DNA of 64,000 bases from IMGVR_UViG_3300044701_003160:62001-126000, one strand, 5' to 3'; positions 818 to 54,840 are shown, counted from the stretch's first letter. The notes: generated by a model not told the origin, from the letters alone. Numbers and translations: made by a program.

Positions 818-2187
818 TTGAAAGCAGTACTATAGTCTGGTTGATTTGAAGAACTTCCATTTCCAGATCCATAAGAGAATACTGGATTTGGTCCAATTAA
901 CTTATCAAAAGAAACCTGAGGATCTCCACCCTGAGAGAATGCTCCCGCCAAATTAATTTCTTGTTGTTGAGGACATGCTGCATCATCATCACATTTGAAA
1001 AAGTTAAGAATACCATTTGCAAAATCTAATGCATTAAATATAGAATCTATGGCACCAGTTACAAGACCAACACCCTGAGAAAATAATGCAATTGCAGTTT
1101 GTACTGCATTTGTAATTTGATCTAAAATACCAAAGTTATTTAATAAGTCAGATACAAAACTTTCAACAAAACAAAATGCAGTATCAATAAGTTTATCAAG
1201 TAAACCTGATAATATATTTCCAATTAAACCTGGAAGTTGTCTTACTAATTTATTAAACAAACAAGAAAGAAGATTGGTTCCTTCATTTATTTTCTTCATA
1301 AATTTTGGCATCTCACTTGGAAATAGAAAAGGCAATACCTTTTTTGCAGAATCGGAAACTACATTATAAGCATAACCACGAATACTATCAAATAAACTTT
1401 TTACATATCCTGTAATATCGCCAGTTGCAATATCTAAAACTTTCTGAATAAATTTTTCTCTATCAGGATCTCCACCACCAAAAAGTTCTGCAATCGTATC
1501 ATAATCTTTAATATCATTCAGTAGATTTTGAATTGTTGTTTGAATTCCCTTGAAAGGACTATTATCAGTTTTACAGGGACTTGCGAGTGGTGTTGGTTTT
1601 TTCCTATCAAGATCTTGTTCTGTCCAAGCTTGAACTGCACTGTCACTTAAATGAATTTTATCACCAATTGATTGAATTACTTTCCAATATTCTTGAGTTC
1701 CTATTAAATTGGTTGGGACAAATGCACCTCTTTCTGGTGTTCCTTCTTTATAAGTTTGATTAAAGAGTTGACCACCACCTATTTCACCTTTTGGTTGTTC
1801 TTTTGGAACATCATTATTGGAGTTAATTAATACTCCATCAATATAAGGCTCTTGTCCTGCCATTCCATCTAAGAACCATCCAGTTACAATCGTACCAGAA
1901 GAAAGTGCAGGAGTGTCATGAAATCCACCAAGACCAGAACCTGCAGTAACTGGCATAACCACATTTGCCATAGGCAACTGTTCGTCAGGAAGATCCTGAG
2001 TATTTGCAGAATGCAATCCAAAATATCTTATGCGATATCGATATCCCCATCCTTTTTGTTGTTCTGCTTCACTAAAAAGTTCGTCCTCAATATTTTCCTG
2101 CCAAGATACATCAGAAACTACTCTACCAAACCATCTTGGTACAGAAGAAACTGTATTTAAATCAAAATTTCCAGAATATTCACTCAT
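814..2187 (-). CDS. Baseplate hub gp5 N-terminal (OB-fold) portion
   Basis: WFGRVV...RYRIRYFGLH...LPDEQLPMANVVMPVT...G.IVTGWFLDG...PYIDG matches the T4 gp5 N-terminal pattern; baseplate context. Confidence 0.75.
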   Translation of the reverse strand: MSEYSGNFDLNTVSSVPRWFGRVVSDVSWQENIEDELFSEAEQQKGWGYRYRIRYFGLHSANTQDLPDEQLPMANVVMPVTAGSGLGGFHDTPALSSGTIVTGWFLDGMAGQEPYIDGVLINSNNDVPKEQPKGEIGGGQLFNQTYKEGTPERGAFVPTNLIGTQEYWKVIQSIGDKIHLSDSAVQAWTEQDLDRKKPTPLASPCKTDNSPFKGIQTTIQNLLNDIKDYDTIAELFGGGDPDREKFIQKVLDIATGDITGYVKSLFDSIRGYAYNVVSDSAKKVLPFLFPSEMPKFMKKINEGTNLLSCLFNKLVRQLPGLIGNILSGLLDKLIDTAFCFVESFVSDLLNNFGILDQITNAVQTAIALFSQGVGLVTGAIDSIFNALDFANGILNFFKCDDDAACPQQQEINLAGAFSQGGDPQVSFDKLIGPNPVFSYGSGNGSSSNQPDYSTAFK

Positions 2188-2402
2188 CAGTCATCATACA
2201 TACGGCATTCGAGAGCATCTGGATTTGAATCACAGTAGAGTTCCAAGGGAGTTGGATCGTGTTCATCATCAGGATGTCTTTCTTGATACTTTTTAAGAGC
2301 ATCGAGTTCATCTTCCAAATGACGCCGACGTTGGCTGTTTGTATTGGGACTATCTAATTCGTCCTTATCATTATTAATGTGCTGCTGAAGTGTCCTATCC
2401 AT
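2187..2402 (-). CDS. cp12: CP12 Calvin-cycle inhibitor
   Basis: C-terminal DPTPLELYCDSNPDALECRMYDD CP12 signature; ATG at 2402 preferred to GTG at 2411. Confidence 0.9.
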   Translation of the reverse strand: MDRTLQQHINNDKDELDSPNTNSQRRRHLEDELDALKKYQERHPDDEHDPTPLELYCDSNPDALECRMYDD

Positions 2403-2445
2403 TTGGAACACGATGTTAATTGTTATTATTTATTATCATTTATAC

Positions 2446-3759
2446 TTATTTTCTCCCAATTGATTCTCTTACAAGATTGAGTCTTGTATAACATCCATTT
2501 TTTGTTATATGATTACACAAATCTGCAATCATATAAACTCCACTTACTTTTTGACTTACAAGTTTTGTGGGATTACTAGAAATCTCTGGGAAATCACAGT
2601 AAACTAAATCTCCAGCACGAAGATCGAAGTCTCCTGGAATTGCGATTGAAAGTTTAGTAGAGAAAAGATTATTATATCTCATATAAGATTGTCTTAAAAT
2701 CTCATCATTATTATAGTTTATCTCTTTTGATTTTGGAAGTTGAGACTTTAAATCTTTTCCTTCAACCAAAGCACCTTGGTCATCAAATTTAAAAGATCTT
2801 CTTGATGTTTTATTTTGGATATCTAAGTCTTTTGCAATTACAGGTTGTTCTTTTCCACCAATATTATTTTCTTTAAATTGTTCTTTAGAATCAAAATCAT
2901 TCTTACGATATTTACTTTGATAAGTGTTTACTGCATTAAGTTCTGATTTTAATTGAGATCCTGTAGTTAATATATTTTTAAGATCCAAAGAACTCTCAAA
3001 GGAATATTGTAAAATTTTTGCATCATAAGTTGGTGGAATTTCTCCGATTATATTATTAAATATCAATCTCCTTTTTGGTTTTTGCTCAAACAGTTTATCA
3101 ATTGACTTGAATTTATATCCCTCATAAGTTTCATAAAAGAAAAATCCTGCAAGTTTTCCTTTTGAGTCTGCAACATCAGGTACAGATCTTGGTGCTAACC
3201 ATGCAGATTTATAAAAAGGTTTTTCAACATTCCCAATAAAACTTAGATTGTTTAGTGTAGTATCAATATCAATTTCTTTTTGTGTCTTTAAAACCTCTGT
3301 TAAAATTTTATTTACTGAATCGGATATTTTTCCATCATATCTTTTTTTAACCCGATATTCCACTAACTCATTATCAATTGCTTCCTTAGTGAAAAGATCG
3401 ACTGTAAATGTGACTTTGTTTGTTGTACTTACGGTTTGTCTTGGTTCTTTAATTCGCAAGTGCTTAGAACCAAGAAGTGAGAGTGTTTTATCATATCCAT
3501 CAGTCATCTTAAGTTCAACTTTTTCACCTACAGTAAGTTTAAGACCTTCCTCTTCAGTAACTGCAGAACCTTCTTCTTTTCGATATCCAGTATCTGCAAA
3601 TGTTGCATTAACTCTAATAGTAGGATCTAAAATACTCTCATAATAATTAAGTTCAACAATACCCCCCGACATATCAACTTTAGGTCTACCATAATTTGAA
3701 TAAAATTCAAATAAATCAATTTGGGCTTGGCCGCCTTGTGCTGCAATATTTGCTGGCAT
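2446..3759 (-). CDS. Putative baseplate hub protein (gp27-like)
   Basis: 437 aa, next to gp5; ELNYYESILDP..., FFFYETYEGYKFKS, IAIPGDFDLRAGD, SGVYMIADLCNHI resemble contractile-tail hub proteins. Confidence 0.5.
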   Translation of the reverse strand: MPANIAAQGGQAQIDLFEFYSNYGRPKVDMSGGIVELNYYESILDPTIRVNATFADTGYRKEEGSAVTEEEGLKLTVGEKVELKMTDGYDKTLSLLGSKHLRIKEPRQTVSTTNKVTFTVDLFTKEAIDNELVEYRVKKRYDGKISDSVNKILTEVLKTQKEIDIDTTLNNLSFIGNVEKPFYKSAWLAPRSVPDVADSKGKLAGFFFYETYEGYKFKSIDKLFEQKPKRRLIFNNIIGEIPPTYDAKILQYSFESSLDLKNILTTGSQLKSELNAVNTYQSKYRKNDFDSKEQFKENNIGGKEQPVIAKDLDIQNKTSRRSFKFDDQGALVEGKDLKSQLPKSKEINYNNDEILRQSYMRYNNLFSTKLSIAIPGDFDLRAGDLVYCDFPEISSNPTKLVSQKVSGVYMIADLCNHITKNGCYTRLNLVRESIGRK

Positions 3760-6700: not shown

Positions 6701-6958
6701 TTTCTTTTCTGCAGCATCAAAATCTTGTTTTTCTTTTTCTTTTCTTTTAACCTCTGCTTTCTTTTGAGATACAATTAAATCTGACTTTAAGAACTTTTCA
6801 ATATTAACTAACTTACCACCAACATCATTACTCTTAACTATTGCTACACTCTTTTTATTAATATTAATTGGAGAAATTAGTCCAGACTTTCCAACTTTTG
6901 TAATTGCCGTAGACTTTGCTGATGGAAGTAGTTTAGAAGGATTTGTAATTTTTGCCAT
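3761..6958 (-). CDS. Tape-measure-like virion protein with phage-tail-lysozyme and M23 peptidase domains
   Basis: AQALGIMANIFRESGF...GIGLFQYS (tail lysozyme); HSGNDY...GYGNLIEIQH...YAHLS...STGSHLHFE (M23); Ala/Gly-rich hydrophobic middle region. Confidence 0.7.
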   Translation of the reverse strand: MAKITNPSKLLPSAKSTAITKVGKSGLISPININKKSVAIVKSNDVGGKLVNIEKFLKSDLIVSQKKAEVKRKEKEKQDFDAAEKKLETPQSKGLRLPGISAPSLGFLDRVKRFLFFTALGWLLPKILEFLPKLEGFAKIVGGIYKFGEGLFGKLFDGFMSLVKFGGDLKEKTLGFIASAKAGVGGNYQTEFDKLEKQFNTFVNASIIVGVLAADIGGAAVDEYNKWRKKSAPEPQKGKKGGKPKVTEGRGGKKPTGKPKVTTGKGGKVPGWWNNLFKGPFAKLKGPLSKFAGAAVPGLGAAVGAADAAARFKSGDNIGGALASVSAGLDTITAILALTGVGVPAAAIFGGVSIGIDILLLIRDIGKVIKETYAPWLPMFSGGGRVVRRYQGGGTTRGGRPVGGPSRRSITPTRKKPPRVSLPKTQPGKDVGGEKKIKEFYAKPQDESKKYTRPSGGWLSTLFDGEKKDLTAFDTLKKMSGTLKSDETLAKGILGVMSSGIDMALGQKPDKKVFKAFFDSIGYVADTLANQRTNKSMSSLMSQIRGFAEGGTVPSRELRGSYGDMSTGDLLAKLIGPTIDQRVNEAIQSIEKELMLKKDTTKDDMQGPGNGFTGTSGGEYGGYAPSGIQKEIYEYLINEKKMSDAQALGIMANIFRESGFRVDAKQPDGPGIGLFQYSSAGRKEAFLRAVPDWEKNWKAQVDYALKEPGEPGQEYLSKKFSSSEEAADWWMRKWERPAEYIQSSTGPKKHREYLSKVPKAPDGTAKFREGESSSSFTGGVLPSTKLGSKAGDRKHPITGEWKMHSGNDYPMPDGTPITITRDGVVTRSEVNGSMTSGYGNLIEIQHSDRSKSIYAHLSDRKVGVGSKVKAGSVIGTVGSTGGSTGSHLHFEYDDPNGNTVSNWQTLNSKADKTFLFGDNVKPSITYKLAMKGGKEGIIEKGIWKAKKWTPEEKQRYNSAQSQASNSPQKPTQIGGRPSTAEQLRQSGIQVQGKLQDGGLIAPSKPNRTIPNSFASYETPGSGMMIAIQPMIQYIEKPSSSKSIDFPMIVPIPVNSSMPDLSLSRG

Positions 6959-6962
6959 CTAC

Positions 6963-9341
6963 TTATCCTCTCAGACCGTAGATTGATGCATACTCTGCTC
7001 TATTATTACTTGGAGCAACTGCAGAAAAATTAGGAACTTCAGATGCACCAGCAAGTCCTGCTGCTCTTGGTCTTGATGATCCACCTCCAGATGCAACCAT
7101 AGGTGGTAGAGTCATCATACCGTTCATTCCCGATCCACCAAAAGTTTTGTATGGAGTAATTGATCTATATCCTCTTCTTGCTGCTTCTGAATTTGGATCC
7201 AGTTTAGCCTGAATTAAATTTGCAATCTCAGATGCTCCTCTTTCAGTTGCTTGTTTAGTAAAAATATATTTGGATTCACCTGGTTGAACTGCAACATTAA
7301 TTAATTGTCTATCGGCTGTCGCTCCAGGAATATTCATTCCAGTATTTTCCTTAATTTCTCCACCTCGCATAAATGGAAGCATAGATGGCATAAAGTTAAG
7401 AGCAGTACCTAGTGTTTTCATTATGCCTAAAGATTTTTTCTTTGCTTTTGGTTTTGCAGGTGCTTCTAGGTTTAACGCGCCGGAGTTGAGTTTCTCTCTA
7501 TATTGATTGAACCTAGAAACTCTATCTTCATATCCATTAATTCCTTTTGGACTGGAAGCAGATGGATTGTTTATTGCTCTAGATGCAGAAAAAACATCAT
7601 TCCAATTATTACCAACTGCAGGTCTTACATTTTCTTTCCAATACATCACAGCAATTTTTGCAGCAATATCACTATTTGTTGCAAGATCTGGATTATTTAC
7701 CAAATCAATTCCCAATTTATCTCCATACTTTTTATAATTATAATCGTGAGTTAATTGGATATATCCTCTACCTTTGTATTTTTTTCCACCACTATAACTG
7801 CTACTTCCACCACCAAGTTCAGTACTCCACTTATATCCTCCAGTTTCGTGAGACATTTGAGATAAGAAAGATGCTAATTCTAATCCCTTTATTCCAGCAG
7901 AGTTGGCGGCTTTTATTAAAGGAAGATCTCCAAACTTGGAAGTTCCAGATAATGGTGATTTTGGTTTTCCTACCATTCCTCCAATATTAAATCTTGGTAT
8001 CATTCCGCCAAGATTAAATCCCCCACCAAATCCAGGAAATCTAAGATTACTCATATTCACGGATCCTGGTTTTCTTCCCGCAAGATATTGTGGTATGTTT
8101 AATGGTTGCCCAGTACGTCTATCAACATATCTTTGTCCAATATCTTGTTGATCTTTTTCTGTGAGAATTGCTTCTCCAGTTTTTGCAGCAATCAGAGTAT
8201 CGTCAGATCCAGCACCAGCAATTGGAACTCCTTGTGAGAAATCCATTCCACCATATGGATTAAATCCTCCCATTTTAAAACTAGGAATCATTCCCCCAAA
8301 ATTAAATTTTGGAACCCGAGTATCTTGTGCTTTATCTACAGATTTTTGTGCTTCATTAAGTTCTGGATTTGTTTTTGGAATTAATCCTGACTCTGGTGTT
8401 TCTTTATCTGTAAATAAATTTCCAATCTCTCTACTTACTAAAGGTGCTGCAGCAAGTGCTAAGAACGCAAGTTTTTTATTTTTTCTTATGAACCCAAATA
8501 TTTTTGGAATATTCATTCCAATCGCAATAATCATTCGGGTAACGCCTTTCAGCAGTCCACGAACTAATTTTCCAAAACCAGTTCCAAATAAAATATAAAG
8601 TCCAGCAAGTGCAGGCCAGTGATCCGATAAGAATTCTATAAAAGAATTAAACTTATTTTGATTTCCTTTATTACTCATCCACTCCATAAAGGAAGTAAAT
8701 CCTCTTCCTAGTAAAGTGAAAAATATGAATTTAAAAATACGATCAATAATTGCCTGAAAAGGTGAAAGTAATTTTTTAGTGGTGGATACTATTGTACCTA
8801 TTCCTTTTTTAAATCCTTCTAATGCAGATTCTTTTTTTCCTCTTCCTTCTGTTTCTTTATCTCTTCTTTCCTTATCAGATTGTTTCTGATCAAATTTAAA
8901 TTTAGAACTTAAAATAGTTAAAATTGAATCTAAAGTATTTTTAATACCATCAGTTTCAAAATTAGAAGATACTGATATTGCATTTGTGGTTGATGCAAGT
9001 TTTCCTTTCTGCGCTTTTATAATTGCTGCAGAAGATGGAAGTTTTTTTTGTCCGGGAATACTAGAAGTCTTAGTAAAACTAACTTTTGTTTTTGCTTTTT
9101 TAACCTTGAATCTAAGACCTTTATCTTTTAAGGTACGAACTCTTTTAAATTCATTTCTTAAAAGTTCATCTTCTTCTCTTGGAAGTTCCTTTCCCGCAAG
9201 TCTTGCTATCGCTAACTTCTTTTTAATAATATCGTGATATGTTTGATAATCTAATTCGACGCCAACATTTAATCCAAGTAACCTGAGAATTACTTCATCA
9301 ATTGATTCAGATTTTACTTTGTTACTTGGATTACTAACCAT
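6963..9341 (-). CDS. Tape-measure-like virion protein with GH19 (chitinase/lysozyme-like) domain
   Basis: FLSQMSHETGG...YKGRGYIQLTHDYNY...AVMYWK...NGYEDRVSRF is GH19; repeated FNxGG motifs. Confidence 0.7.
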   Translation of the reverse strand: MVSNPSNKVKSESIDEVILRLLGLNVGVELDYQTYHDIIKKKLAIARLAGKELPREEDELLRNEFKRVRTLKDKGLRFKVKKAKTKVSFTKTSSIPGQKKLPSSAAIIKAQKGKLASTTNAISVSSNFETDGIKNTLDSILTILSSKFKFDQKQSDKERRDKETEGRGKKESALEGFKKGIGTIVSTTKKLLSPFQAIIDRIFKFIFFTLLGRGFTSFMEWMSNKGNQNKFNSFIEFLSDHWPALAGLYILFGTGFGKLVRGLLKGVTRMIIAIGMNIPKIFGFIRKNKKLAFLALAAAPLVSREIGNLFTDKETPESGLIPKTNPELNEAQKSVDKAQDTRVPKFNFGGMIPSFKMGGFNPYGGMDFSQGVPIAGAGSDDTLIAAKTGEAILTEKDQQDIGQRYVDRRTGQPLNIPQYLAGRKPGSVNMSNLRFPGFGGGFNLGGMIPRFNIGGMVGKPKSPLSGTSKFGDLPLIKAANSAGIKGLELASFLSQMSHETGGYKWSTELGGGSSSYSGGKKYKGRGYIQLTHDYNYKKYGDKLGIDLVNNPDLATNSDIAAKIAVMYWKENVRPAVGNNWNDVFSASRAINNPSASSPKGINGYEDRVSRFNQYREKLNSGALNLEAPAKPKAKKKSLGIMKTLGTALNFMPSMLPFMRGGEIKENTGMNIPGATADRQLINVAVQPGESKYIFTKQATERGASEIANLIQAKLDPNSEAARRGYRSITPYKTFGGSGMNGMMTLPPMVASGGGSSRPRAAGLAGASEVPNFSAVAPSNNRAEYASIYGLRG

Positions 9342-9513
9342 TGGCTCTTTGCTGTGCCCGTTGTTCTTCTTCTTCCAGATGCTGTTTTAGTAAAATCACA
9401 TAAATGTCCCTTTCCCAAGGTATCATATTTTCAATCTCTGTTAATGAATATTTATGATACTGCATTAAGGAAAAATTTAACTTGAAGTAACTCTCCAAGT
9501 CCATATGACTCAT
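9334..9513 (-). CDS. Baseplate hub assembly catalyst gp51
   Basis: 59 aa, below track cutoff: MSHMDLESYFKLNFSLMQYHKYSLTEIENMIPWERDIYVILLKQHLEEE...; LMQYHKYSLTEIENMIPWER motif; follows gp26. Confidence 0.85.
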   Translation of the reverse strand: MSHMDLESYFKLNFSLMQYHKYSLTEIENMIPWERDIYVILLKQHLEEEEQRAQQRANG

Positions 9514-9515
9514 TC

Positions 9516-10235
9516 CTATGCGAAAAAACTTGATAACCCTTCTAGAACAACTTCACTTTCAACTTCTGTCTTTGGATTTTTAACTTTAATTGTATGAGAA
9601 AGTTTAGGCATCGTTTCAAAGAACTTTTCAATTTCTTTGAATTGTGATGAGTTCATTTGATCTAAAAACTCCATTAATTCTTTCTTAGTTACATCTGCTG
9701 CAACCCAGACTTCATCCTCAGTATAAATTTTATCTACACAAGAACCAATCAATTCAAATGATTGATCCATCGTACCATCAGCAGAAAGATCAAAGTTACT
9801 CTTAATAAACTGTTCTAATGATGGATACTTCATCTCCATCACGATTGAATCATCAAGTTTAATTCTATTATTATGTTCTGAATTTTTTTGAACTTGAATA
9901 TCATCTACAAGAATCTTAACAGGAACAGTAGTCTCTCCATCATCCGGACAGATGATATTCACTTCAATCTCTTCTCCAACTGACTTACCGCGAATGTTGA
10001 GAAAGAGATATTCAATATCAAAAGTAGGAAGAGACTCTACTTTAATTCCTTTAGTCTCAATACAATTTTTAATGACTGTTTTGATCGCGGTAGTAATCTG
10101 TTTGGTATCTTCAGATTCTAATGCAATCACTAATAGTTTTTCTTCTTTTACTAGAAAGGGTCTGTATTTGATTGTTTGTCCAGTTGAAGGCAACTCAAGT
10201 TCATAAGTTGGTGTAGAAATCTTAGGTAAAGGCAT
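9516..10235 (-). CDS. Baseplate hub subunit gp26
   Basis: MPLPKISTPTYELELPSTG..IKYRPFLVKEEK...FDIEYLFLNIRGKSVGE. Confidence 0.9.
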   Translation of the reverse strand: MPLPKISTPTYELELPSTGQTIKYRPFLVKEEKLLVIALESEDTKQITTAIKTVIKNCIETKGIKVESLPTFDIEYLFLNIRGKSVGEEIEVNIICPDDGETTVPVKILVDDIQVQKNSEHNNRIKLDDSIVMEMKYPSLEQFIKSNFDLSADGTMDQSFELIGSCVDKIYTEDEVWVAADVTKKELMEFLDQMNSSQFKEIEKFFETMPKLSHTIKVKNPKTEVESEVVLEGLSSFFA

Positions 10236-10268
10236 AATGTCCTATAGAAACTTCAGTATGTTTATTTA

Positions 10269-11078
10269 TCAGTCTATTTCAACGAATCCATCAGACCCAA
10301 CTGGAAGGCCAGAACCTCCCTCCGGTACATTAAAAAATCCATCAGATCCAACTGAAAGTCCACCCCCTCCGCCGGGAATATTAACGAATCCATCAGCGCC
10401 AATAGGAGGAATACCAGTTGCTGTTGTTTGTCCTGGTTGCATAGGTTTTTCAACTGCAACGGAGTTTCTTACATAACGAATAAAGGAAAATGAAACAGTG
10501 CATTTTAATAATTGAGAGGACTCATAAGAAACTGGTATTGAATTGATACTTAAAGGATACGCACGAATGAATTTATATTCTAATGCTGAACCAACATAAT
10601 CTCTCTCAAACTTTGTTATGTATAATGCATCAGTCTGATAATCATCTGGAAAATTTACACGATAAAAATAGTTTCTATTTTCCAAATCCTCTGCATTATT
10701 TTCACCGACACAATAAGAAATCCACCTTTCAAAAAAGTTTATAATTCCATAGTTTTTATCTACATAAAAAGTAAAATCAATGCGGTCGTCATACTGCCTT
10801 CTATATGCGGGTCTTTCCGTGACTCCAGTGTGATCATCAGTAATCTCATTTGTCATCAAAGAAGCACCAGGAAGTGATGCTTCAGAACAAGACAATTCAA
10901 TTAGTTCTTGATTTTTTCTTGCATTATAATCAGATCCAGGAAATCTTCCTTCACCCTGCTTAAGAAATGCTGCAGTGGCCGCTGGGGGTTGAAATCTACA
11001 AACATAATGAGAAGTTAATGCCGGTCTTAATAACTTCTGTTTTATCTCAAAGTTTTTAACTACAGTTGGTCCTGCCAT
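10269..11078 (-). CDS. Tail tube initiator / tube-like protein (gp54-like)
   Basis: LSCSEASLPG...YRRQYDDRIDFTFYVD...AYPLSINSIPVSY...CTVSFSF tube-fold motifs; Gly-rich repeated C-tail. Confidence 0.7.
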   Translation of the reverse strand: MAGPTVVKNFEIKQKLLRPALTSHYVCRFQPPAATAAFLKQGEGRFPGSDYNARKNQELIELSCSEASLPGASLMTNEITDDHTGVTERPAYRRQYDDRIDFTFYVDKNYGIINFFERWISYCVGENNAEDLENRNYFYRVNFPDDYQTDALYITKFERDYVGSALEYKFIRAYPLSINSIPVSYESSQLLKCTVSFSFIRYVRNSVAVEKPMQPGQTTATGIPPIGADGFVNIPGGGGGLSVGSDGFFNVPEGGSGLPVGSDGFVEID

Positions 11079-11117
11079 CTATAAATACTTTTACTGATAT
11101 ATTATGTATGCTGGAAA

Positions 11118-11561
11118 ATGGCAGAAAGTATTAAGAGTATATACAAACCATCTCATCCAGAAAAATATCAAGGTGATGCATCAAACATCATTTGCAGAAG
11201 TAGTTGGGAGAGACGCTTTTGTTATTATTGTGACCATAATCCAAGCATAGTATCTTGGGCATCGGAAGAATTTTGCATCTCTTACGTGTCTCCAGTTGAT
11301 AACCGAGTTCATAGATACTTTCCAGATTATCTTATTAAAGTAAAAGAGGAATCTGGAAGAATTAAGACTTATGTAATTGAAGTCAAACCTAAGAAACAAA
11401 CAGTTCCACCAAAGCAAAGATCAAGAGTGACGAAATCATACTTGCACGAATGTAAAACTTATGCAGTCAATCAAGCAAAGTGGAAAGCAGCACAAGAATG
11501 GTGTGCCGATAGAATGTTAGAGTTCAAAGTCATTACAGAAGATGAATTAGGTATCAAATAA
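11118..11561 (+). CDS. Head completion protein gp4 (nuclease-like)
   Basis: YKPSHPEKY.GD..NII.RSSWE...WASEE...YVSPVDNRVHRYFPD...IEVKP. Confidence 0.9.
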   Translation: MAESIKSIYKPSHPEKYQGDASNIICRSSWERRFCYYCDHNPSIVSWASEEFCISYVSPVDNRVHRYFPDYLIKVKEESGRIKTYVIEVKPKKQTVPPKQRSRVTKSYLHECKTYAVNQAKWKAAQEWCADRMLEFKVITEDELGIK

Positions 11562-24975: not shown

Positions 24976-25046
24976 AGGTCTTGTGATATAGAAATAATAA
25001 ACATAAAAATACCGAATGCTATGAATGCTGCGAGTAATGTGAGCAT
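24972..25046 (-). CDS. Small hydrophobic peptide (24 aa)
   Basis: MLTLLAAFIAFGIFMFIISISQDL. Confidence 0.45.
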   Translation of the reverse strand: MLTLLAAFIAFGIFMFIISISQDL

Positions 25047-25594
25047 TTGAGATTTTCTACGAGTGTTTGGAGTTCTTGTAGGGAAGCGTCGTTTTTGAGT
25101 GTGTTGGCTCTATTGCTTATGACCCACACATTACCTTTTATGTATCCTTTTTCTGGAATGATTTTATCTAATGAAGGACTATTTGGATGATAACCTTTTT
25201 TAGGTTGTATCTCAATAGGAATACCAAGTAAAGGGCAAGTTTCGGGAATGACTATATCAATAAGTTCCAGATTGAATGGAATATTATTTTGCTTTGCTCT
25301 ACTTTTTGCTCTGGTCAAAATTCTATATTCAACTGATTTTGATACTGCGTTGGGGTCAAATCTTTCACGATTTTTGGCGTTTACTATTTCTTTACGAATA
25401 CATCCACAAGATTGAGTTCTACCATTTAACAATCCCTCTCTTCTTGTTGAAGTTGTATTTCCACCGCAAGAACAAGAGCACTCGCATAGAATATATTTTT
25501 TATTACTATATTCTCTTAAAACAGTCAGTCTCCCAAAAGTTTTTCCAACTAATCCTCCGCAAGGAATTGATTTTTTATTTAATCCCATATTCAT
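25019..25594 (-). CDS. Free-standing HNH-type homing endonuclease
   Basis: GKTFGRLTVL...CECSCG...SCGC N-domain; PSLDKIIPEKGYIKGNVWVISNRAN.LK nuclease motif; just downstream of psbD. Confidence 0.75.
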   Translation of the reverse strand: MNMGLNKKSIPCGGLVGKTFGRLTVLREYSNKKYILCECSCSCGGNTTSTRREGLLNGRTQSCGCIRKEIVNAKNRERFDPNAVSKSVEYRILTRAKSRAKQNNIPFNLELIDIVIPETCPLLGIPIEIQPKKGYHPNSPSLDKIIPEKGYIKGNVWVISNRANTLKNDASLQELQTLVENLKCSHYSQHS

Positions 25595-26818: not shown

Positions 26819-27343
26819 TTAGTGCTTATGCTTTTGTAGGTATCTAACTGCGTTGCTTAATGTATCTAAGTTGTCTCCAACCAATCCTAGCATTCTGTTG
26901 CAGTTGCTACAAAGCAATCCACGAACCTTTCCTGTCTTATGGTCGTGGTCCACATAAAGGTTATTACTATCCTTTCTACCATTTGTATTTGGATTAAAAC
27001 AAATAACACAAACTTCATTTTGTTCTTGTAGAAGGTTTTTATATTGCTCTAATCCAAAATCTTCACCATAAGTATATTTCAACATATAGTCTTTCTTATC
27101 GTCATAAGAAGGTCTCTTATCTTTATAGTCTTTACTATAACACTCTTTACACCTCTTATGACCTTTATAATATTCTGAAATAAGTTTTTCTACACCACAC
27201 TTGTTGCAGACGATATGAGTTTTACTCGCCCAGTTTTCTGCATAAGTTTTTTCTTCACATCTTATACACCTTCTACGACCTTCTCTAAAATCAGAGACAG
27301 AAAGTTCTTTGTTGCAACTTCTACAAATCTTCGTGGTTCTCAT
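26819..27343 (-). CDS. Endonuclease VII-like free-standing homing endonuclease (F-CphI-like)
   Basis: CVIC...LYVDHDHKTGKVRGLLCSNCNRMLG; two N-terminal CxxC repeats; between psbA and psbD. Confidence 0.85.
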   Translation of the reverse strand: MRTTKICRSCNKELSVSDFREGRRRCIRCEEKTYAENWASKTHIVCNKCGVEKLISEYYKGHKRCKECYSKDYKDKRPSYDDKKDYMLKYTYGEDFGLEQYKNLLQEQNEVCVICFNPNTNGRKDSNNLYVDHDHKTGKVRGLLCSNCNRMLGLVGDNLDTLSNAVRYLQKHKH

Positions 27344-27386: not shown

Positions 27387-27424
27387 ATTATAACACAAAA
27401 AAAGAGACCCGTAAAGGGTCTCTA
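27387..27424 (-). terminator. psbA terminator overlapping a promoter
   Basis: GAGACCC-tttac-GGGTCTC-T7; TTTACG-N17-TATAAT. Confidence 0.75.
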
Positions 27425-27430: not shown

Positions 27431-28947
27431 TCAACCGATTGAAGGAGCAGTGAGAGCAACTGGTGTTGCTTCTGCTGCTGCAAGGTCAAGTGGGAAGTTG
27501 TGCTTACAGTTTGGACTATATCTTCACCATACTCTTTATGAGGTTAGGTGTCGGACGCTATTGGTGTATTACATCTCACGCTTGAGAAACCACCTAGTCT
27601 CTGAACCTTCCAATCAAGTTCGTGATTGGCTTGGCTGCTGATTGCCCGTTAGGGTTTCCAGCAATTCATCCGAAGTTTATCTTACCTTTTCAGATAAGAG
27701 CGCCCACAAATCGAGCGTTGCGTTCATGCATGACTTCCATTCCAAGTCCTGCACGATTTAGGACATCTGCCCAAGTGTTAATAACTTTACCTTGACTATC
27801 AACGATAGACTGGTTGAAGTTGAAACCGTTGCACTGAACCCATAAGTTTACCATTCTTATGGAGTGGACTATATCTTCATCCATTTAGGATGTTGGGCGC
27901 TATTGGTGTATTACATCTCACGCTTGAGAAACCACCTAGTCTCTGAACCTTTCCAAGAAGCGTCTTGGACTTGGCTGCTGATTACCCAATATGGAGGGCT
28001 TCCAGCAATTCACCCAATGTTTACCGTCAAATTGCTAGGACGGGACCCCGACGATTGAGGTTAAATGCCATCGTAGAAACACCAAGAGCAGTGAACCAGA
28101 TGCCTACAACAGGCCAGGCAGCCAGGAAGAAGTGCAGTGAACGGGAGTTATTAAAGGAAGCATATTGAAAAATAAGGCGTCCAAAATACCCGTGAGCAGC
28201 AACGATGTTGTAGGTCTCTTCTTCTTGACCGAACTTATATCCGTAGTTCTGTGACTCATTCTCAGTAGTTTCACGAACCAGTGAAGAAGTCACCAGTGAA
28301 CCGTGCATAGCACTGAAGAGTGAACCACCGAACACACCAGCAACTCCAAGCATGTGGAAGGGGTGCATCAGGATATTGTGTTCTGCTTGGAAGACAAGCA
28401 TATAGTTAAACGTACCAGAGATACCAAGAGGCATCGCATCAGAGAAAGAACCTTGACCGAAAGGATAAACCAGGAATACGGCAGAAGCAGCAGCAACAGG
28501 TGCGCTGTAAGCAACACAGATCCAAGGACGCATACCTAGACGGTAAGAGAGTTCCCATTCACGTCCCATATAAGCATAGATGCCGATGAGGAAGTGAAAT
28601 ACAACGAGTTGGAAAGGTCCACCGTTATAAAGCCATTCATCAAGAGAAGCAGCTTCCCAGATAGGATAGAAGTGAAGTCCGATAGCATTAGAAGAAGGAA
28701 CAACGGCACCAGAGATGATGTTGTTTCCGTACATTAGAGAACCAGCAACTGGTTCACGAATGCCGTCGATGTCCACTGGGGGAGCACCAACGAAAGCGAT
28801 AATGAAGCAAGTCGTAGCAGCAAGCAGGCAAGGAATCATCAGGACTCCGAACCAACCAACATACAGACGATTGTTAGTGGAAGTAACCCACTCACAGAAT
28901 TGGTTCCAGGTATTTGTGGAACGTTGTTGAGCAATTGTAGCAGTCAT
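27431..28947 (-). CDS. psbA: Photosystem II D1 protein, three exons (28058-28947, 27714-27831, 27431-27502)
   Basis: Joined exons give 1080 nt = 359 aa + stop, restoring ...[12 protein letters not shown]...[14 protein letters not shown]... Confidence 0.97.
27503..27713 (-). mobile_element. Group I intron 2 of psbA (211 nt, no ORF), after codon A336
   Basis: 5' exon ends in U, intron ends in G; core elements TCAGAGACTA and AAGATATAGTCC; guide UUUGUGGGCG pairs exon 2 end and exon 3 start (CACAA). Confidence 0.93.
27832..28057 (-). mobile_element. Group I intron 1 of psbA (226 nt, no ORF), within codon L297
   Basis: Exon ...AACCU / intron ...CAGUG / exon CAACGG restores frame; core AGAGACTA and AAGATATAGTCC; guide GGGGU pairs ACCU. 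Confidence 0.9.
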
Positions 28948-28949
28948 TT

Positions 28950-29070
28950 GTTTTAAAAGGGTAAGTATGATTCAGGGGGACTGAATGGTTACAAGTATTC
29001 CCACGACACCCTCCATCGTGGGTATGAGGGATGCTTTACTTCTCGTGATCCCGGTTGGAGAAGATTCCGT
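28950..29070 (-). ncRNA. Structured psbA 5' leader (PhotoRC-II-like RNA motif)
   Basis: Hairpins CTTCTC/GAGAAG, CCCACGA/TCGTGGG and ATTCAG/CTGAAT between promoter and psbA ATG; family name from recall. Confidence 0.6.
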
Positions 29071-29112
29071 AGGTAAGAAATTGTTACATTCCTTAACCCC
29101 GTGTATGTATAT

Positions 29113-50643: not shown

Positions 50644-50649
50644 GGGTCT

Positions 50650-50842
50650 TTTAGGCTCGCCACCAATTCTTTGACTGGAAATTGGAAACCAGGCGGGAGT
50701 AAGATCCCATCCGCACCACCAATCCTTGAGAGAGATTGGAAACTCATAATAGGGTCATATTGACTCCACCAGTACTTTTAGAGTCTCTCCGTGACTAAAG
50801 GGGTTCATCACCGACCAGGGCTAGTTTTAAGTCATACCGGGA
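50650..50842 (-). ncRNA. Structured ~190-nt RNA (manA/wcaG-type cyanophage motif candidate)
   Basis: No ORF; hairpins CCAATC/GATTGG, GCGG/CCGC, CCAATT/AATTGG; UGGUG and UGGCG motifs; lies between tRNA region and glycan genes. Confidence 0.6.
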
Positions 50843-52314: not shown

Positions 52315-52388
52315 TCGGGACGATAGGATTTGAACCTACGGCCTGACGCTCCCAAAGCGCCTGCTCTACCAAACTGAGCTACGTCCCG
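52315..52388 (-). tRNA. tRNA-Pro(TGG)
   Basis: CGGGACG/CGTCCCG; anticodon loop TTTGGGA. Confidence 0.95.
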
Positions 52389-52412
52389 ATTTCTTTGTGT
52401 ATCCTATCAGGT

Positions 52413-52571
52413 TTATCGAACCCTGTCAACCACCTGAAGAACACCGTGAGCATAAAAGAAAAGGAGTACTGAACCGATTGTTGCTGATATTATTGTAGCA
52501 GTTTTATTGTGCCTGTCAATGGCTTTTGCAACTGACTGGTCGATCATTTCTTGAACTTCTTCAGGTGTCAT
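52413..52571 (-). CDS. Small membrane protein (52 aa)
   Basis: MTPEEVQEMIDQSVAKAIDRHNK...IGSVLLFFYAHGVL. Confidence 0.55.
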   Translation of the reverse strand: MTPEEVQEMIDQSVAKAIDRHNKTATIISATIGSVLLFFYAHGVLQVVDRVR

Positions 52572-52716
52572 TTTTATTACCAAGAAATTTTGCCAGAGGA
52601 TCTCTTTTTGTTCTAATTATTTCACACGCTCTTTTATAAAACATATTATCAGTATTACCTGATGATTCAAACGTTTCCTTTATTTTAACCCAATTTTGGT
52701 ATGTGTGATCATCCAT
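52561..52716 (-). CDS. Small hypothetical protein (51 aa)
   Basis: MDDHTYQNWVKIKETFESSGNTDNMFYKRACEI... Confidence 0.6.
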   Translation of the reverse strand: MDDHTYQNWVKIKETFESSGNTDNMFYKRACEIIRTKRDPLAKFLGNKNDT

Positions 52717-52803
52717 TTGGGATCTATACGTTATTATTACTAATTTAGTTTAATTAACAATCTTATTTTGTCAAGTATGTGTGGATATCATCATAATTTT
52801 AAA

Positions 52804-52888
52804 CGGTGAGGAAAGGATTCGAACCTTCGGATGCTTTCACATCGACTGTTTTCAAGACAGTTGCCTTAAACCACTCGGCCACCTCACC
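52804..52888 (-). tRNA. tRNA-Ser(TGA)
   Basis: GGTGAGG/CCTCACC; ACTGT-CTTGAAA-ACAGT; long variable arm. Confidence 0.95.
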
Positions 52889-53243
52889 ATATTATTTCCA
52901 ATAAACCAGCGTGTATTTTACGATGACACGGAGAACAGAGCATATAACATTTATCTATTTCTGTTTGGATTGTCTCCCATTTGTATCCTTTTCCCGCTAA
53001 GTAAGAAACTTCCTTTTTCTTATTTTCTGCCTCAATATGATGAAAATCAAAACAACAGGGAGGATGGTAATCTCCACAAGCATCACAACAACCTTTTTCA
53101 AGTTTTAATTGATTTAGTTTTTCAACCATCAACTTTTTATTATTATATTCTCTTTGGTATTTAATTTTTTTAAATTCTCCAGATTGTTTTTGAGCCCAAA
53201 GACGTTGTGCTTCTTTTTGCTTTTCTTTATCTTTATAAGGCAT
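52884..53243 (-). CDS. HNH endonuclease
   Basis: CDACG..HPPCCFDFHH...EIDKCYMLCSPCHRKIH; stop overlaps tRNA-Ser 5' end. Confidence 0.85.
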   Translation of the reverse strand: MPYKDKEKQKEAQRLWAQKQSGEFKKIKYQREYNNKKLMVEKLNQLKLEKGCCDACGDYHPPCCFDFHHIEAENKKKEVSYLAGKGYKWETIQTEIDKCYMLCSPCHRKIHAGLLEIIW

Positions 53244-53284
53244 ATCATTTAAAAGGTTCTAATTTATTTATAAAAAATTAGAAC

Positions 53285-53536
53285 TTAACGGACTTCGAAA
53301 TCAAGACGCCTCACTTTTCTTTGGCGTCTTTGTTCTTGCCAGGCAATATCCTGGGAGGTTAACACGTTTGTTTTTGGTGTTTCCTTTAATGAGTTTAGCA
53401 TTACAATACGGGATAAGTCAACTGCCGAAATCTTATCTCCTCTAATTGTTGCCATATTGGGACATCCACAACTAATAGTTTTTGAAGAGTGCCCCACTAA
53501 TTCTTTACTGCAATCTTTGCATCTTATTGATATCAT
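53285..53536 (-). CDS. Hypothetical Zn-ribbon protein
   Basis: CKDC...CGCPN. Confidence 0.65.
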   Translation of the reverse strand: MISIRCKDCSKELVGHSSKTISCGCPNMATIRGDKISAVDLSRIVMLNSLKETPKTNVLTSQDIAWQEQRRQRKVRRLDFEVR

Positions 53537-53551
53537 TTTTTGTTACCGTAA

Positions 53552-53986
53552 TCACTGTAAATGTGCTCTTAATTGCCAAACAAATTTTCCGTGAGATTCC
53601 ATCAAATCTTGAACTAGATTGGCAGTTGCATAAGATTTTTGAGTTTCAGACTCTTCCGAAATTTCACCCATTAACTCACAAAATTTAGTATTGTTATCCA
53701 AAAGTTCTTGAAGCATCTCTTTTGCTCCCGTAGAACTTGTTGCTTCTTTGATTTGAGTTACTTCAAGCATTCTTGAAAGAGAACTTAAAGGTTTTACATT
53801 TAAGTATCTCATATGTTCGGAGAGCCTGTCAATCTCTTCAAACATCGTTTCATATTGTCCACCAAACAGTTGATGAAGTTGAGTAAAGTCTTCACCTACA
53901 ACATTCCAGTGAAATGCCCAGGTTTTATGGAACAAAACAAAAAGTGATGACTGAGCATCACTGAGTAATTTATAAAGTTTTTCCAT
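53552..53986 (-). CDS. dps: Dps/ferritin-like DNA-protection protein
   Basis: KTWAFHWNVVG.DF.QLH.LF..QY...EIDRLSEH ferroxidase pattern. Confidence 0.9.
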   Translation of the reverse strand: MEKLYKLLSDAQSSLFVLFHKTWAFHWNVVGEDFTQLHQLFGGQYETMFEEIDRLSEHMRYLNVKPLSSLSRMLEVTQIKEATSSTGAKEMLQELLDNNTKFCELMGEISEESETQKSYATANLVQDLMESHGKFVWQLRAHLQ

Positions 53987-54014
53987 TATACTTTTTTTCA
54001 AGTATTTATGCAAA

Positions 54015-54087
54015 TGGGAGCAGAGGGATTCGAACCCCCGACATTCTGCGTGTAAAGCAGACGCTGCTACCGCTGAGCTATGCTCCC
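54015..54087 (-). tRNA. tRNA-Val(TAC)
   Basis: GGGAGCA/TGCTCCC; TCTGC-TTTACAC-GCAGA. Confidence 0.95.
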
Positions 54088-54090
54088 TTG

Positions 54091-54162
54091 TCCTCTGTCT
54101 GGGAATCGAACCCAGTATCCGTGTGTGTTGTCCACCCGTCCTTACCAATAGACTACCAGAGG
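54091..54162 (-). ncRNA. tRNA-like element with non-canonical anticodon arm
   Basis: CCTCTG/CAGAGG acceptor, GTCT..TGGTAA..GGAC D-arm, CTGGG-TTCGATT-CCCAG T-arm; anticodon arm GGTGG-ACAACAC-ACACG lacks U33 and pairs poorly. Confidence 0.7.
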
Positions 54163-54164
54163 TA

Positions 54165-54236
54165 CTCCACAACCTGGATTCGAACCAGGGACCAATCGAT
54201 TAACAGTCGATGGCTCTACCGCTGAGCTATTGTGGA
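54165..54236 (-). tRNA. tRNA-Asn(GTT)
   Basis: TCCACAA/TTGTGGA; ATCGA-CTGTTAA-TCGAT. Confidence 0.95.
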
Positions 54237-54244
54237 ATGTTCTA

Positions 54245-54448
54245 CTACTTAGAACTTACAAAATCATTAATCGTTTCTGCTTGCTTAAGAACATCCTGTA
54301 GAGTTGGAAACTCTGGATAATCCATCTTCACAGTATTTGAAGAATTTAGATTCCAATAACGAGCAGTATCCATTTCAGTACTGAACTGATCATTTAGCAT
54401 ATTATATGCTTGCTTGAAGATTTCAAAACGAAGTTCGTAAGGTGTCAT
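54245..54448 (-). CDS. Hypothetical protein
   Basis: MTPYELRFEIFKQA...AETINDFVS; GGAG RBS. Confidence 0.7.
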   Translation of the reverse strand: MTPYELRFEIFKQAYNMLNDQFSTEMDTARYWNLNSSNTVKMDYPEFPTLQDVLKQAETINDFVSSK

Positions 54449-54495
54449 TTATTTACTCCCGTGTGTTTGTGTGTTTAAAGAACCTGAAGGTTCAG

Positions 54496-54566
54496 AGCGA
54501 GTGACGGGGATCGAACCCGTGACAAGAGCTTGGAAGGCTCGCATGTTACCGCTACACCACACTCGC
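54496..54566 (-). tRNA. tRNA-Gly(TCC)
   Basis: GCGAGTG/CACTCGC; anticodon loop CTTCCAA; own promoter TTGACA-N17-TATGAT (54576-54604). Confidence 0.95.
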
Positions 54567-54605
54567 AATAAGACAATCATAAGGTATAAAACCCAGATTG
54601 TCAAG

Positions 54606-54687: not shown

Positions 54688-54690
54688 GGA

Positions 54691-54763: not shown

Positions 54764-54840
54764 AAGATGGAGTAAGTGTGATATACCTCATAAGGATATA
54801 ACAGTGACTTACCCTCTATCACTTTTATATATTACACCAG

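What the first reader, a model, noticed from the sequence alone, without database searches (positions are those of the whole stretch)
27503..28057. Twin ORF-less group I introns in psbA share a 54-nt identical core but target different sites
Seen: psbA is split by two introns (226 nt inside L297; 211 nt after A336) separated by a 118-nt exon. A 54-nt block is identical in both (27556-27609 = 27898-27951), as are GCTGCTGATT, TCCAGCAATTCA and AAGATATAGTCC. The 5' guide sequences differ and each pairs with its own exon junctions (GGGGU with ACCU; UUUGUGGGCG with CGCU and CACAA). Known: cyanophage S-PM2 has one ORF-less group I intron near the psbA 3' end. Inference: one ribozyme was duplicated and retargeted by guide replacement, or the cores are homogenised by gene conversion. 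Recombination between the cores could also delete exon 2. Two splicing steps could gate D1 synthesis during infection.
Basis: partly seen in the sequence, partly recalled or inferred. Interest (0 to 1): 0.8.

Follow-up and report, generated by a model that had tools for sequence, protein, structure and literature searches.

The report
Two group I introns in phage psbA
A cyanophage photosystem gene (psbA) is split by two real self-splicing group I introns; these are two separate intron lineages, common in uncultivated cyanophages, that carry the same swapped 54-base core module, so they are not a fresh duplication.

Summary
psbA (minus strand, 28947-27431) carries two ORF-less group I introns: 226 nt inside the L297 codon and 211 nt after A336. 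They are separated by a 118-nt exon and share an exact 54-nt block. Both pass Rfam RF00028 (84.8 and 77.6 bits). Removing them gives an intact 359-aa D1.

The interpretation needs correcting. Outside the block the two introns are only 36-66% identical, no closer to each other than to the S-PM2 intron. Each has same-site relatives in many IMG/VR cyanophage contigs, and some of those contigs carry only one of the two. So a duplication followed by retargeting in this genome is not supported.

The block is a self-contained module: J6/7, the P7 5' strand, the P7.1/P7.2 hairpin and the start of P3'. Identical alleles of it occur in both intron lineages, including in single-intron contigs. This points to module exchange by recombination.

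Multi-intron phage psbA is already on record (S-CBWM1) and is widespread here: about 14 insertion sites, and up to 8 or more introns in one gene.

New lead: the Endo VII-type endonuclease gene just downstream, a 40%-identical relative of F-CphI, co-occurs with the L297 intron (18 of 20 classes against 8 of 29). Splicing and endonuclease specificity remain untested.

The parts
28058..28947 (-). psbA exon 1 (D1 residues 1-296 plus the first two bases of the L297 codon)
   Evidence: ORF list; junction mapping and spliced translation; 85% DNA identity to psbA of S-RIM8 and other cyanophages
27832..28057 (-). Intron 1: 226-nt ORF-less group I intron at CDS nt 890 (inside the L297 codon)
   Evidence: RF00028 at 84.8 bits over the full model; U at -1 and G at the 3' end; 22 distinct same-site relatives, with compensatory changes at 26 of 57 predicted pairs
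28045..28055 (-). Intron 1 guide region. Intron nt 3-7 (AUCGU) form P10 with exon 2 nt +7 to +3. Intron nt 9-13 (GGGGU) form P1 with intron nt 1 (C) and exon 1 ...ACCU.
   Evidence: Pairing read from the sequence. P10 is kept by a compensatory change (intron G6 to A, exon +4 C to U) in L160 and L111. P1 pairs are invariant, or compensated once, in 22 sequences. The link between exon bases and intron presence peaks at -5 to +10.
27714..27831 (-). psbA exon 2, 118 nt (last base of the L297 codon through A336; includes H332 and E333)
27503..27713 (-). Intron 2: 211-nt ORF-less group I intron at CDS nt 1008 (between A336 and H337)
   Evidence: RF00028 at 77.6 bits over the full model; 12 distinct same-site relatives of 208-212 nt, with compensatory changes at 17 of 64 predicted pairs
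27701..27710 (-). Intron 2 guide UUUGUGGGCG. Intron nt 5-9 form P10 with exon 3 CACAA. Intron nt 9-13 form P1 with intron nt 1 (C) and exon 2 ...CGCU.
   Evidence: Sequence; the 5-bp P10 is intact in all 1008-site relatives
27431..27502 (-). psbA exon 3 with stop codon (H337 to G359)
27898..27951 (-). 54-nt shared block, copy in intron 1: end of P6, J6/7, P7 5' strand, P7.1/P7.2 hairpin (27905-27936), start of P3'
   Evidence: element assignment from the Rfam alignment and RNAalifold
27556..27609 (-). 54-nt shared block, copy in intron 2 (P7.1/P7.2 hairpin at 27563-27594)
   Evidence: In the 1008 family, P7.2 shows changes on both sides in 6 of 12 sequences at four of its five pairs.
26819..27343 (-). 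Free-standing Endo VII-family endonuclease gene (174 aa), 87 nt downstream of the psbA stop codon. It is related to the S-PM2 homing endonuclease F-CphI and has an extra N-terminal CxxC...CxxC repeat.
   Evidence: Pfam PF02945, E 7.7e-22; 40% identity to F-CphI, E 2e-26; PHROG endonuclease VII; co-occurrence with the 890 intron
27403..27423 (.). Terminator-like hairpin (8 bp, scored on both strands) between psbA and the endonuclease gene. A promoter-like site on the minus strand (27415-27387) overlaps it.
   Evidence: consensus scan only; inverted repeat I3
28987..29076 (-). PhotoRC-II RNA motif in the psbA 5' leader
   Evidence: RF01717 at 49.5 bits against a cut-off of 39; also found upstream of psbA in related loci

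Best explanation
The cyanophage psbA gene is interrupted by two independent members of one family of small ORF-less group I introns. The family is IA-like, with a P7.1/P7.2 hairpin between P7 and P3'. Each intron sits at its own insertion site: CDS nt 890 (in the L297 codon) and nt 1008 (between A336 and H337). Each has its own guide sequence forming P1 and P10 with its own exons.

By inference from the fold, each intron removes itself from the pre-mRNA by the usual two guanosine-initiated transesterifications. This restores a 359-aa D1. An unspliced transcript would stop 8 codons into intron 1 and would lack the C-terminal Mn-cluster ligands.

The 54-nt identity is not a remnant of a recent duplication. 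It is a self-contained core module: J6/7, the P7 5' strand, the whole P7.1/P7.2 hairpin and the first bases of P3'. Homologous recombination has moved this module between the two intron lineages, either within a gene that carries both or between co-infecting phages. The identity stops where each intron needs its own pairing partners, at P6 on one side and P3' on the other.

Inferred with less confidence: the Endo VII-type gene just downstream is a free-standing homing endonuclease that targets the intronless nt-890 site. That would make intron 1 its protective partner, in the 'collaborative homing' arrangement described for S-PM2. Intron 2 would then be present without a dedicated partner.
For: Intron identity: RF00028 hits over the full model; canonical U at -1 and terminal G, and an intact spliced ORF; compensatory changes in P1, P2, P3, P5, P6, P7.1/P7.2, P8 and P9 among 22 and 12 same-site relatives; P10 covariation between intron and exon.

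Separate lineages: identity by segment is 46%, 66%, 100% and 36%. Some contigs carry only the 890 intron (for example L171, L191, L197, L199) and others only the 1008 intron (L037, L101, L126, L136, L141, L151). In nine distinct both-site lineages, only the window lineage and L133/L144 share the block; the others share 9-36 nt.

Module exchange: the identical 35-nt hairpin allele is found in 890 introns of L171, L178 and L196 and in the 1008 intron of L126. A second allele (TCCCA/TGGGA) also occurs in both lineages. Other alleles are shared between sites 1002 and 890, 548 and 890, 548 and 179, and 548 and 655.

Endonuclease: PF02945 and 40% identity to F-CphI. Window-type endonuclease genes go with the 890 intron in 18 of 20 distinct psbA classes, against 0 of 8 for F-CphI-type, 3 of 11 for other Endo VII types and 5 of 10 with none (Fisher p = 2.4e-5). 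Among loci with the window-type gene, the 1002-1011 region varies from empty to a 211-nt, 251-nt or 258-nt intron or a site-1002 intron. The label is not clustered on a psbA exon tree. Published precedent for an intron plus a free-standing endonuclease in S-PM2: PMC6083498, PMC3984707.
Against: No direct evidence of splicing. Metatranscriptome contigs show a 226-nt skip at the right place, but with sides of only 21-26 nt. Intronless psbA alleles with the same junction sequence exist in nature, and the same joint appears in a run of unknown type.

The place and direction of the module exchange cannot be resolved.

Two contigs (L213, L233) have the window-type endonuclease but no 890 intron; both have a site-1002 intron. 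Eight classes have the 890 intron without this endonuclease.

Loci were gathered with intron or endonuclease patterns, not at random. Physical linkage alone (about 0.7 kb) could produce part of the association. The exon tree is poorly resolved (225 columns).
Confidence: 0.78

Rival explanations
1. Recent duplication within this genome: one intron was copied into a second psbA site and only its guide sequence was replaced.
For: The 54-nt identical block and several shorter identical strings. Both introns belong to one family.
Against: Flanking segments are only 36-66% identical, no closer than to the S-PM2 intron. The P8 and P9 architecture differs. Each intron has close same-site relatives (93-100% in flanking segments) in contigs that lack the other. 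Other both-site lineages have unrelated cores.
Confidence: 0.04
2. Gene conversion inside this particular gene: the two introns arrived separately, and then one copied its core onto the other in the window's lineage. The identical alleles seen elsewhere spread outward from such twin-bearing genomes.
For: The block is identical in all four intron copies of two diverged twin lineages (window and L133/L144), although their flanks differ at about 5-9% of positions. The repeats lie 342 nt apart in direct orientation, which favours recombination.
Against: The same allele is present in contigs with only one of the introns (L126, L171, L178, L196). Two of nine both-site lineages sharing it is not clearly more than chance, and those two are related. 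The data do not separate this from exchange during co-infection.
Confidence: 0.25
3. The block is identical because of purifying selection on the catalytic core, not because of exchange.
For: J6/7 and P7 are the most conserved parts of group I introns. GUUCAGAGACUA is shared by more than 119 viral contigs.
Against: The 32-nt P7.1/P7.2 hairpin inside the block varies freely in the population through compensatory changes (at least 10 stem alleles). Yet it is identical here, loop included. The closest non-psbA phage introns are about 78% identical over this region.
Confidence: 0.03
4. The downstream Endo VII endonuclease targets the nt 1002-1008 region as F-CphI does, or some other site. Its association with the 890 intron is linkage or shared descent.
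For: It is homologous to F-CphI and in the same position after psbA. L213 and L233 carry it with a site-1002 intron and no 890 intron.
Against: At least 8 contigs with this endonuclease have an uninterrupted 997-1019 region and only the 890 intron. These would be self-cut if the target lay there. The N-terminal region, presumed to bind DNA, differs from F-CphI and carries an extra zinc-ribbon-like repeat. F-CphI-type genes go with site 1002 in 7 of 8 cases and never with 890.
Confidence: 0.3

Closest known systems
S-PM2 psbA group I intron with the free-standing homing endonuclease F-CphI ('collaborative homing'; Zeng et al. 2009 and Millard et al. 2004, as cited in PMC6083498, PMC3984707 and PMC5931967)
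   Same: A small (212 nt) ORF-less group I intron in the 3' part of cyanophage psbA. The core sequence is of the same family (81% over P3-P6). An Endo VII-family endonuclease gene lies directly downstream. A PhotoRC-II leader is also present.
   Different: S-PM2 has one intron, after R334 (nt 1002). The window has two, at nt 890 and nt 1008, and neither is at the S-PM2 site. The endonuclease is only 40% identical and is longer at the N-terminus. Its co-occurrence points to the 890 site, not the 1002 site. The P7.1/P7.2 hairpin is of a different type.
Multi-intron psbA of isolated cyanophages S-CBWM1 (two annotated introns) and S-SRM01
   Same: More than one group I intron in a phage psbA. The 3' ORF-less introns are of the same family.
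   Different: Their sites are nt 649 and 1011 (S-CBWM1) and about 260, 750 and 1002 (S-SRM01). Their upstream introns carry endonuclease ORFs. None is at nt 890 or 1008. No block is shared between introns of one gene in those two phages.
Domain shuffling between the td and nrdB/sunY introns of phage T4 (Bryk and Belfort 1990, Nature; recalled from memory, not found in the library)
   Same: Recombination between homologous core elements of different group I introns in one phage genome, giving chimeric but functional introns. This is the same mechanism proposed for the 54-nt module.
   Different: In T4 it was seen as laboratory deletions between introns in different genes. Here it is inferred from natural allele sharing between introns 342 nt apart in one gene and across a phage population.
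Several group I introns in one phage gene (for example Staphylococcus phage Twort nrdE, cited in PMC3653736) and the four psbA introns of Chlamydomonas chloroplasts (cited in PMC5931967)
   Same: Several self-splicing introns within one conserved gene. Light-dependent splicing of psbA introns has been reported for Chlamydomonas and for S-PM2d (PMC5931967).
   Different: These are different intron lineages and sites. No shared identical module has been reported for them, as far as I could check.

Membership tests
Group I catalytic intron (Rfam RF00028) | Full-length match to the covariance model above the curated threshold | tested here: met
   84.8 and 77.6 bits against a cut-off of 50, model positions 1-253
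Group I catalytic intron (Rfam RF00028) | 5' splice site after a U that forms a U-G pair in P1 with an internal guide sequence; intron ends in G | tested here: met
   Intron 1: ACCU|C pairs with GGGGU. Intron 2: CGCU|C pairs with GGGCG. Both introns end in G.
Group I catalytic intron (Rfam RF00028) | Conserved helices P3-P8 maintained by compensatory substitutions | tested here: met
   26 of 57 pairs (890 family) and 17 of 64 pairs (1008 family) show changes on both sides with the pair kept. The P7 pseudoknot (GACUA/UAGUC) is invariant, so it is uninformative.
Group I catalytic intron (Rfam RF00028) | Self-splicing activity giving ligated exons | tested here: inconclusive
   A 226-nt skip is present in metatranscriptome contigs, but the sides are 21-26 nt and the skip cannot be told apart from intronless alleles.
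Subgroup IA-type architecture (P7.1/P7.2 between P7 and P3') | An extra hairpin or hairpins inserted between the 5' strand of P7 and the 3' strand of P3 | tested here: met
   A 32-nt insertion relative to the Rfam model at exactly that place. The outer 4-bp and inner 5-bp stems covary (columns 128-159). Assignment to a precise subgroup (IA1, IA2 or IA3) was not tested.
Collaborative homing pair (ORF-less intron plus free-standing endonuclease, S-PM2 type) | An Endo VII-family (DHHRN) endonuclease gene adjacent to the intron-containing gene | tested here: met
   PF02945, E 7.7e-22; 40% identity to F-CphI; 87 nt downstream of psbA
Collaborative homing pair (ORF-less intron plus free-standing endonuclease, S-PM2 type) | The endonuclease cuts the intronless allele at or near the intron insertion site, and the intron blocks the cut | not testable with these tools
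   Co-occurrence only: 18 of 20 against 8 of 29. Exceptions are L213 and L233.
Intragenomic intron duplicate (paralogous twin) | The two copies are each other's closest relatives along their whole length | tested here: not met
   Only the 54-nt block is closest. In the flanks each intron is 82-100% identical to same-site relatives in other contigs and 36-66% identical to its neighbour.

The most novel reading that the evidence does not exclude
In uncultivated cyanophages, psbA is a hotspot for one group I intron family. That family has colonised roughly 14 sites in the gene, with up to 8 or more introns in a single gene. Its members swap a self-contained catalytic-core module (J6/7, P7, P7.1/P7.2) between introns at different sites. 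Endo VII-type free-standing homing endonucleases have diversified alongside them, into paralogues matched to different insertion sites: F-CphI to nt 1002 and the window's 174-aa enzyme to nt 890. The window would then hold a second, independent case of collaborative homing, next to an intron that has no partner.
Probability: 0.45. Interest if true: 0.6.

Novelty: new variant of a known kind. Interest (0 to 1): 0.42.

Why it matters
Phage-encoded D1 keeps host photosynthesis running during infection. Splicing of the single S-PM2 psbA intron has been reported to respond to light (PMC5931967), so additional introns in the same gene bear directly on how these phages control D1 supply.

For intron biology, this locus and its relatives give a natural data set of one ribozyme family at many sites in one gene. 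It shows which parts are site-specific (P1, P10, P2, P9) and which part behaves as an interchangeable module.

If the downstream endonuclease does target the L297 site, it would be a second case of an intron and a free-standing endonuclease converging on one site. It would also offer a pair of related Endo VII-type enzymes with different DNA specificities to compare.

The twin arrangement itself is not exceptional. It recurs in at least nine distinct lineages in IMG/VR.

Tried and rejected
1. Metatranscriptome evidence for splicing. The runs hold mostly community psbA. The 226-nt skip has short sides and also appears in a run of unknown type, so it is inconclusive.

2. Search for the predicted exon-2 deletion (a hybrid intron joining exon 1 to exon 3) in all loci held. 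The five regex hits were simply exon 2 plus the 1008 intron. A 348-nt intron-to-intron joint in run X17 had a 20-nt side and is best read as a mosaic relative.

3. Cellular genomes. The 3' motif of the 890 intron occurs once in the species-representative collection, on a 1.7-kb contig binned into a Flavobacteriaceae MAG. This is probably phage DNA, so there is no sign of a cellular source.

4. GenBank phage collection. No isolate has a close copy of either intron. The best hits cover at most 71% of the query at about 70% identity, in S-SRM01 and S-CBWM1.

5. Literature. Millard 2004, Millard 2010 and Zeng 2009 are not held. I therefore could not check whether the metagenomic psbA introns they reported include sites 890 or 1008. 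Puxty 2018 says only that such introns are widespread in marine metagenomes.

6. A first crude regex call of the 890 status mislabelled several loci in the tree. It was corrected by translation. The exon tree itself is poorly resolved.

7. A test of whether twins share the block more often than chance: two related lineages of nine is too few to say.

Full report
**What is there**

The window comes from a 219,018-base IMG/VR virus record rated complete. It carries psbA and psbD, a PhotoRC-II leader, a tRNA cluster and other cyanomyovirus features. psbA lies on the minus strand from 28947 to 27431.

Mapping the exons against the D1 reading frame gives:
- exon 1: 28947-28058
- intron 1: 28057-27832 (226 nt)
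- exon 2: 27831-27714 (118 nt)
- intron 2: 27713-27503 (211 nt)
- exon 3: 27502-27431

Joining the exons yields an uninterrupted 359-aa D1. Intron 1 lies between the second and third base of the L297 codon (CDS nt 890). Intron 2 lies between A336 and H337 (CDS nt 1008).

Read without splicing, the frame stops 8 codons into intron 1. By standard D1 numbering (established knowledge), such a product would lack H332, E333, H337, D342 and A344, the C-terminal ligands of the Mn cluster.

**Are they group I introns?**

Rfam RF00028 matches both over the whole model, at 84.8 and 77.6 bits against a cut-off of 50. They are the only such matches in the genome record. Both 5' splice sites follow a U, and both introns end in G.

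In intron 1, GGGGU (intron nt 9-13) pairs with the intron's first base and exon ...ACCU to form P1. This P10 is kept by a two-sided change (intron G6 to A with exon +4 C to U) in contigs L160 and L111. In intron 2, UUGUG pairs with exon 3 CACAA (P10), and GGGCG pairs with the intron's first base and exon ...CGCU (P1).

I collected 22 distinct relatives of intron 1 and 12 of intron 2, each at the same psbA site, from IMG/VR. RNAalifold finds two-sided compensatory changes at 26 of 57 and 17 of 64 predicted pairs. These fall in P1, P2, P3, P5, P6, P8 and P9, and in a hairpin inserted between the 5' strand of P7 and P3'. That insertion (P7.1/P7.2) is the hallmark of IA-type introns. The folds are therefore under selection.

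Direct evidence of splicing is missing. Metatranscriptome contigs do show a 226-nt skip at the right place. However, its sides are only 21-26 nt, it also appears in a run of unknown type, and intronless alleles with the same junction exist in nature.

**The 54-nt block**

The longest common substring is 54 nt, at 27898-27951 and 27556-27609. It runs from the last bases of P6 through J6/7, the 5' strand of P7 and the whole P7.1/P7.2 hairpin into the first bases of P3'.

Outside the block the two introns are 46% identical in P1-P2, 66% in P3-P6 and 36% in P8-P9. The S-PM2 intron is 74% identical to either of them in P3-P6. The architectures also differ. Intron 1 has a short P8 and a 35-nt P9. 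Intron 2 has a 26-nt P8 and only 10 nt between P7 and its terminal G. These are not recent whole-intron copies of each other.

**Relatives elsewhere**

Three pattern scans and one protein-guided scan of IMG/VR returned several dozen contigs with phage psbA containing group I introns. Mapping junctions by the same rule (best D1 translation, U at -1, G at the 3' end) gives roughly 14 insertion sites. These are CDS nt 179, 230, about 260, 317, about 408, 499, 548, 570, 645-655, 750, 890, 989-992, 1002, 1008 and 1011.

The S-PM2 intron is at 1002. S-SRM01 has introns at about 260, 750 and 1002. S-CBWM1 has introns at 649 and 1011, both annotated in the record. One contig (L178) has eight RF00028 matches inside a single psbA.

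Both the 890 and 1008 sites are occupied in nine distinct lineages. The 890 intron occurs alone in contigs such as L171, L191, L197 and L199. The 1008 intron occurs alone in L037, L101, L126, L136, L141 and L151. In five of the both-site lineages, the 1008 site holds a 251-258-nt intron that shares only 9-12 nt with its neighbour.

No close copy of either intron is in the GenBank phage collection. The 890 motif is essentially absent from the collection of bacterial and archaeal genomes searched.

**What the block is**

Only the window's lineage (identical in L080 and L118) and the related L133/L144 lineage share the 54-nt block between their two introns. Yet the same 35-nt hairpin allele is present in the 890 introns of L171, L178 and L196 and in the 1008 intron of L126. 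L126 has no 890 intron, and L171 and L196 have no intron at site 1008.

A second allele, differing by a compensated pair (TCCCA/TGGGA), is likewise found in both lineages. Other hairpin alleles are shared between sites 1002 and 890, 548 and 890, 548 and 179, and 548 and 655. At the same time the hairpin is highly variable in the population, with at least ten stem alleles, all compensated. Selection alone therefore cannot explain the identity.

The best reading is that this part of the core moves between intron lineages by homologous recombination. It can do so because it is self-contained. The hairpin carries both of its strands, and the P7 5' strand pairs with a 3' strand that is the same in all these introns. 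The identity ends where each intron needs its own partner strand, in P6 and P3'.

Whether the exchange happened inside a gene with both introns or between co-infecting phages cannot be decided from these data. As I recall, shuffling of core domains between T4 introns was shown experimentally by Bryk and Belfort (1990). I could not retrieve that paper.

**The endonuclease downstream**

The 174-aa ORF at 27343-26819 starts 87 nt after the psbA stop codon. It is an Endo VII-family protein (PF02945, E 7.7e-22) and is 40% identical to F-CphI, the free-standing homing endonuclease of S-PM2. It has an additional N-terminal CxxC...CxxC repeat. F-CphI cuts intronless psbA, and the S-PM2 intron protects against that cut (PMC6083498).

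I sampled contigs both by intron and by endonuclease, and collapsed them to distinct psbA classes. The window-type enzyme (83% identity or more) goes with an 890 intron in 18 of 20 classes. The F-CphI type does so in 0 of 8; by endonuclease clustering, 7 of 8 F-CphI-type loci sit with a site-1002 intron instead. Other Endo VII types do so in 3 of 11, and contigs with no endonuclease in 5 of 10 (Fisher p = 2.4e-5).

Among loci with the window-type enzyme, the 1002-1011 region is variously empty or holds a 211-nt, 251-nt or 258-nt intron or a site-1002 intron. The association is therefore with site 890 specifically. The label is also not clustered on a (weakly resolved) psbA exon tree.

Two exceptions (L213, L233) carry the enzyme without the 890 intron. 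L213 has a variant site (AATTTG in place of AACCTC).

I infer, at roughly even odds, that this enzyme targets the intronless nt-890 site and that intron 1 is its protective partner. This needs a cleavage assay.

Mutual information between exon bases and intron presence peaks sharply at -5 to +10, with its maximum at +7. P1 and P10 pairing largely explains this peak, so it does not by itself show co-conversion.

- Duplication and retargeting in this genome: not supported.
- Homogenisation of the cores: supported as module exchange, but it is a population-wide feature of the intron family, not a peculiarity of this gene.
- Deletion of exon 2 by recombination between the repeats: possible in principle, but no such product is among the loci held.
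- Gating of D1 synthesis: untested. [quoted passage not shown]

**Novelty**

Known already:
- ORF-less group I introns in cyanophage psbA with a neighbouring Endo VII-type endonuclease
- more than one intron in a phage psbA (annotated in S-CBWM1)
- several introns in one phage gene (PMC3653736)

Not found in the isolate genomes or in the papers I could read:
- the two insertion sites used here
- the sharing of identical core modules across sites
- the link between a distinct endonuclease paralogue and the L297 site

I could not read Millard 2004, Millard 2010 or Zeng 2009, which analysed metagenomic psbA introns, so part of this may already be on record.

Noticed in passing
L178 (IMGVR_UViG_3300042987_001812), locus 6822-11183: A single phage psbA gene with eight RF00028 matches, plus a further gap of about 890 nt at nt 645 that probably holds an endonuclease-bearing intron. 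A 1.08-kb coding sequence is spread over about 4.7 kb.
   Followed up: partly
L002 (Synechococcus phage S-SRM01, NC_070963.1), locus 827-3229: psbA is annotated as two partial genes plus a homing endonuclease, and the paper proposes one intron (PMC8557907). Exon mapping and Rfam show three introns, at about nt 260 (with the endonuclease), nt 750 and nt 1002. The C-terminal two exons are unannotated.
   Followed up: partly
window 25019-25594 (-): A second endonuclease-like ORF (191 aa; PHROG 3322 'endonuclease', E 5e-34; no Pfam hit) lies directly downstream of psbD. The order on the minus strand is therefore psbA, endonuclease, psbD, endonuclease.
   Followed up: partly
window 50649-50747 (-), 52315-55511 (-), 55519-55555 (-): A wcaG RNA motif (98 bits), a cluster of eight tRNA genes, and an abiF RNA match (44.9 bits) immediately next to the last tRNA.
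   Followed up: no
L126 (IMGVR_UViG_3300005613_001030): Another case of two introns in one psbA sharing an identical P7.1/P7.2 module. Here the sites are nt 548 and 655, and the hairpin is of the S-PM2 type.
   Followed up: no
L256 (RFXU01000325.1, 1680 bases): The only hit to the 890 intron motif in the species-representative genome collection is a short contig binned into a Flavobacteriaceae MAG. Its psbA exon is identical to that of phage contig L178, so it is probably mis-binned cyanophage DNA.
   Followed up: partly
L078 6074-6169, L199 88-140, L160 3656-3746: Glutamine riboswitch aptamer matches occur a few kb from psbA in several related phage contigs.
   Followed up: no
Klebsiella jumbo phages (e.g. 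MT708547.1 302955-303076): Unannotated stretches about 78% identical to the P6-P8 core of intron 1. These suggest unannotated group I introns of the same broad family in unrelated phages.
   Followed up: no
L237-L240, L242: A third clade of Endo VII-type genes lies downstream of psbA genes that have no intron in their 3' half. L240 has no intron at all, so these are candidates for intronless homing.
   Followed up: partly
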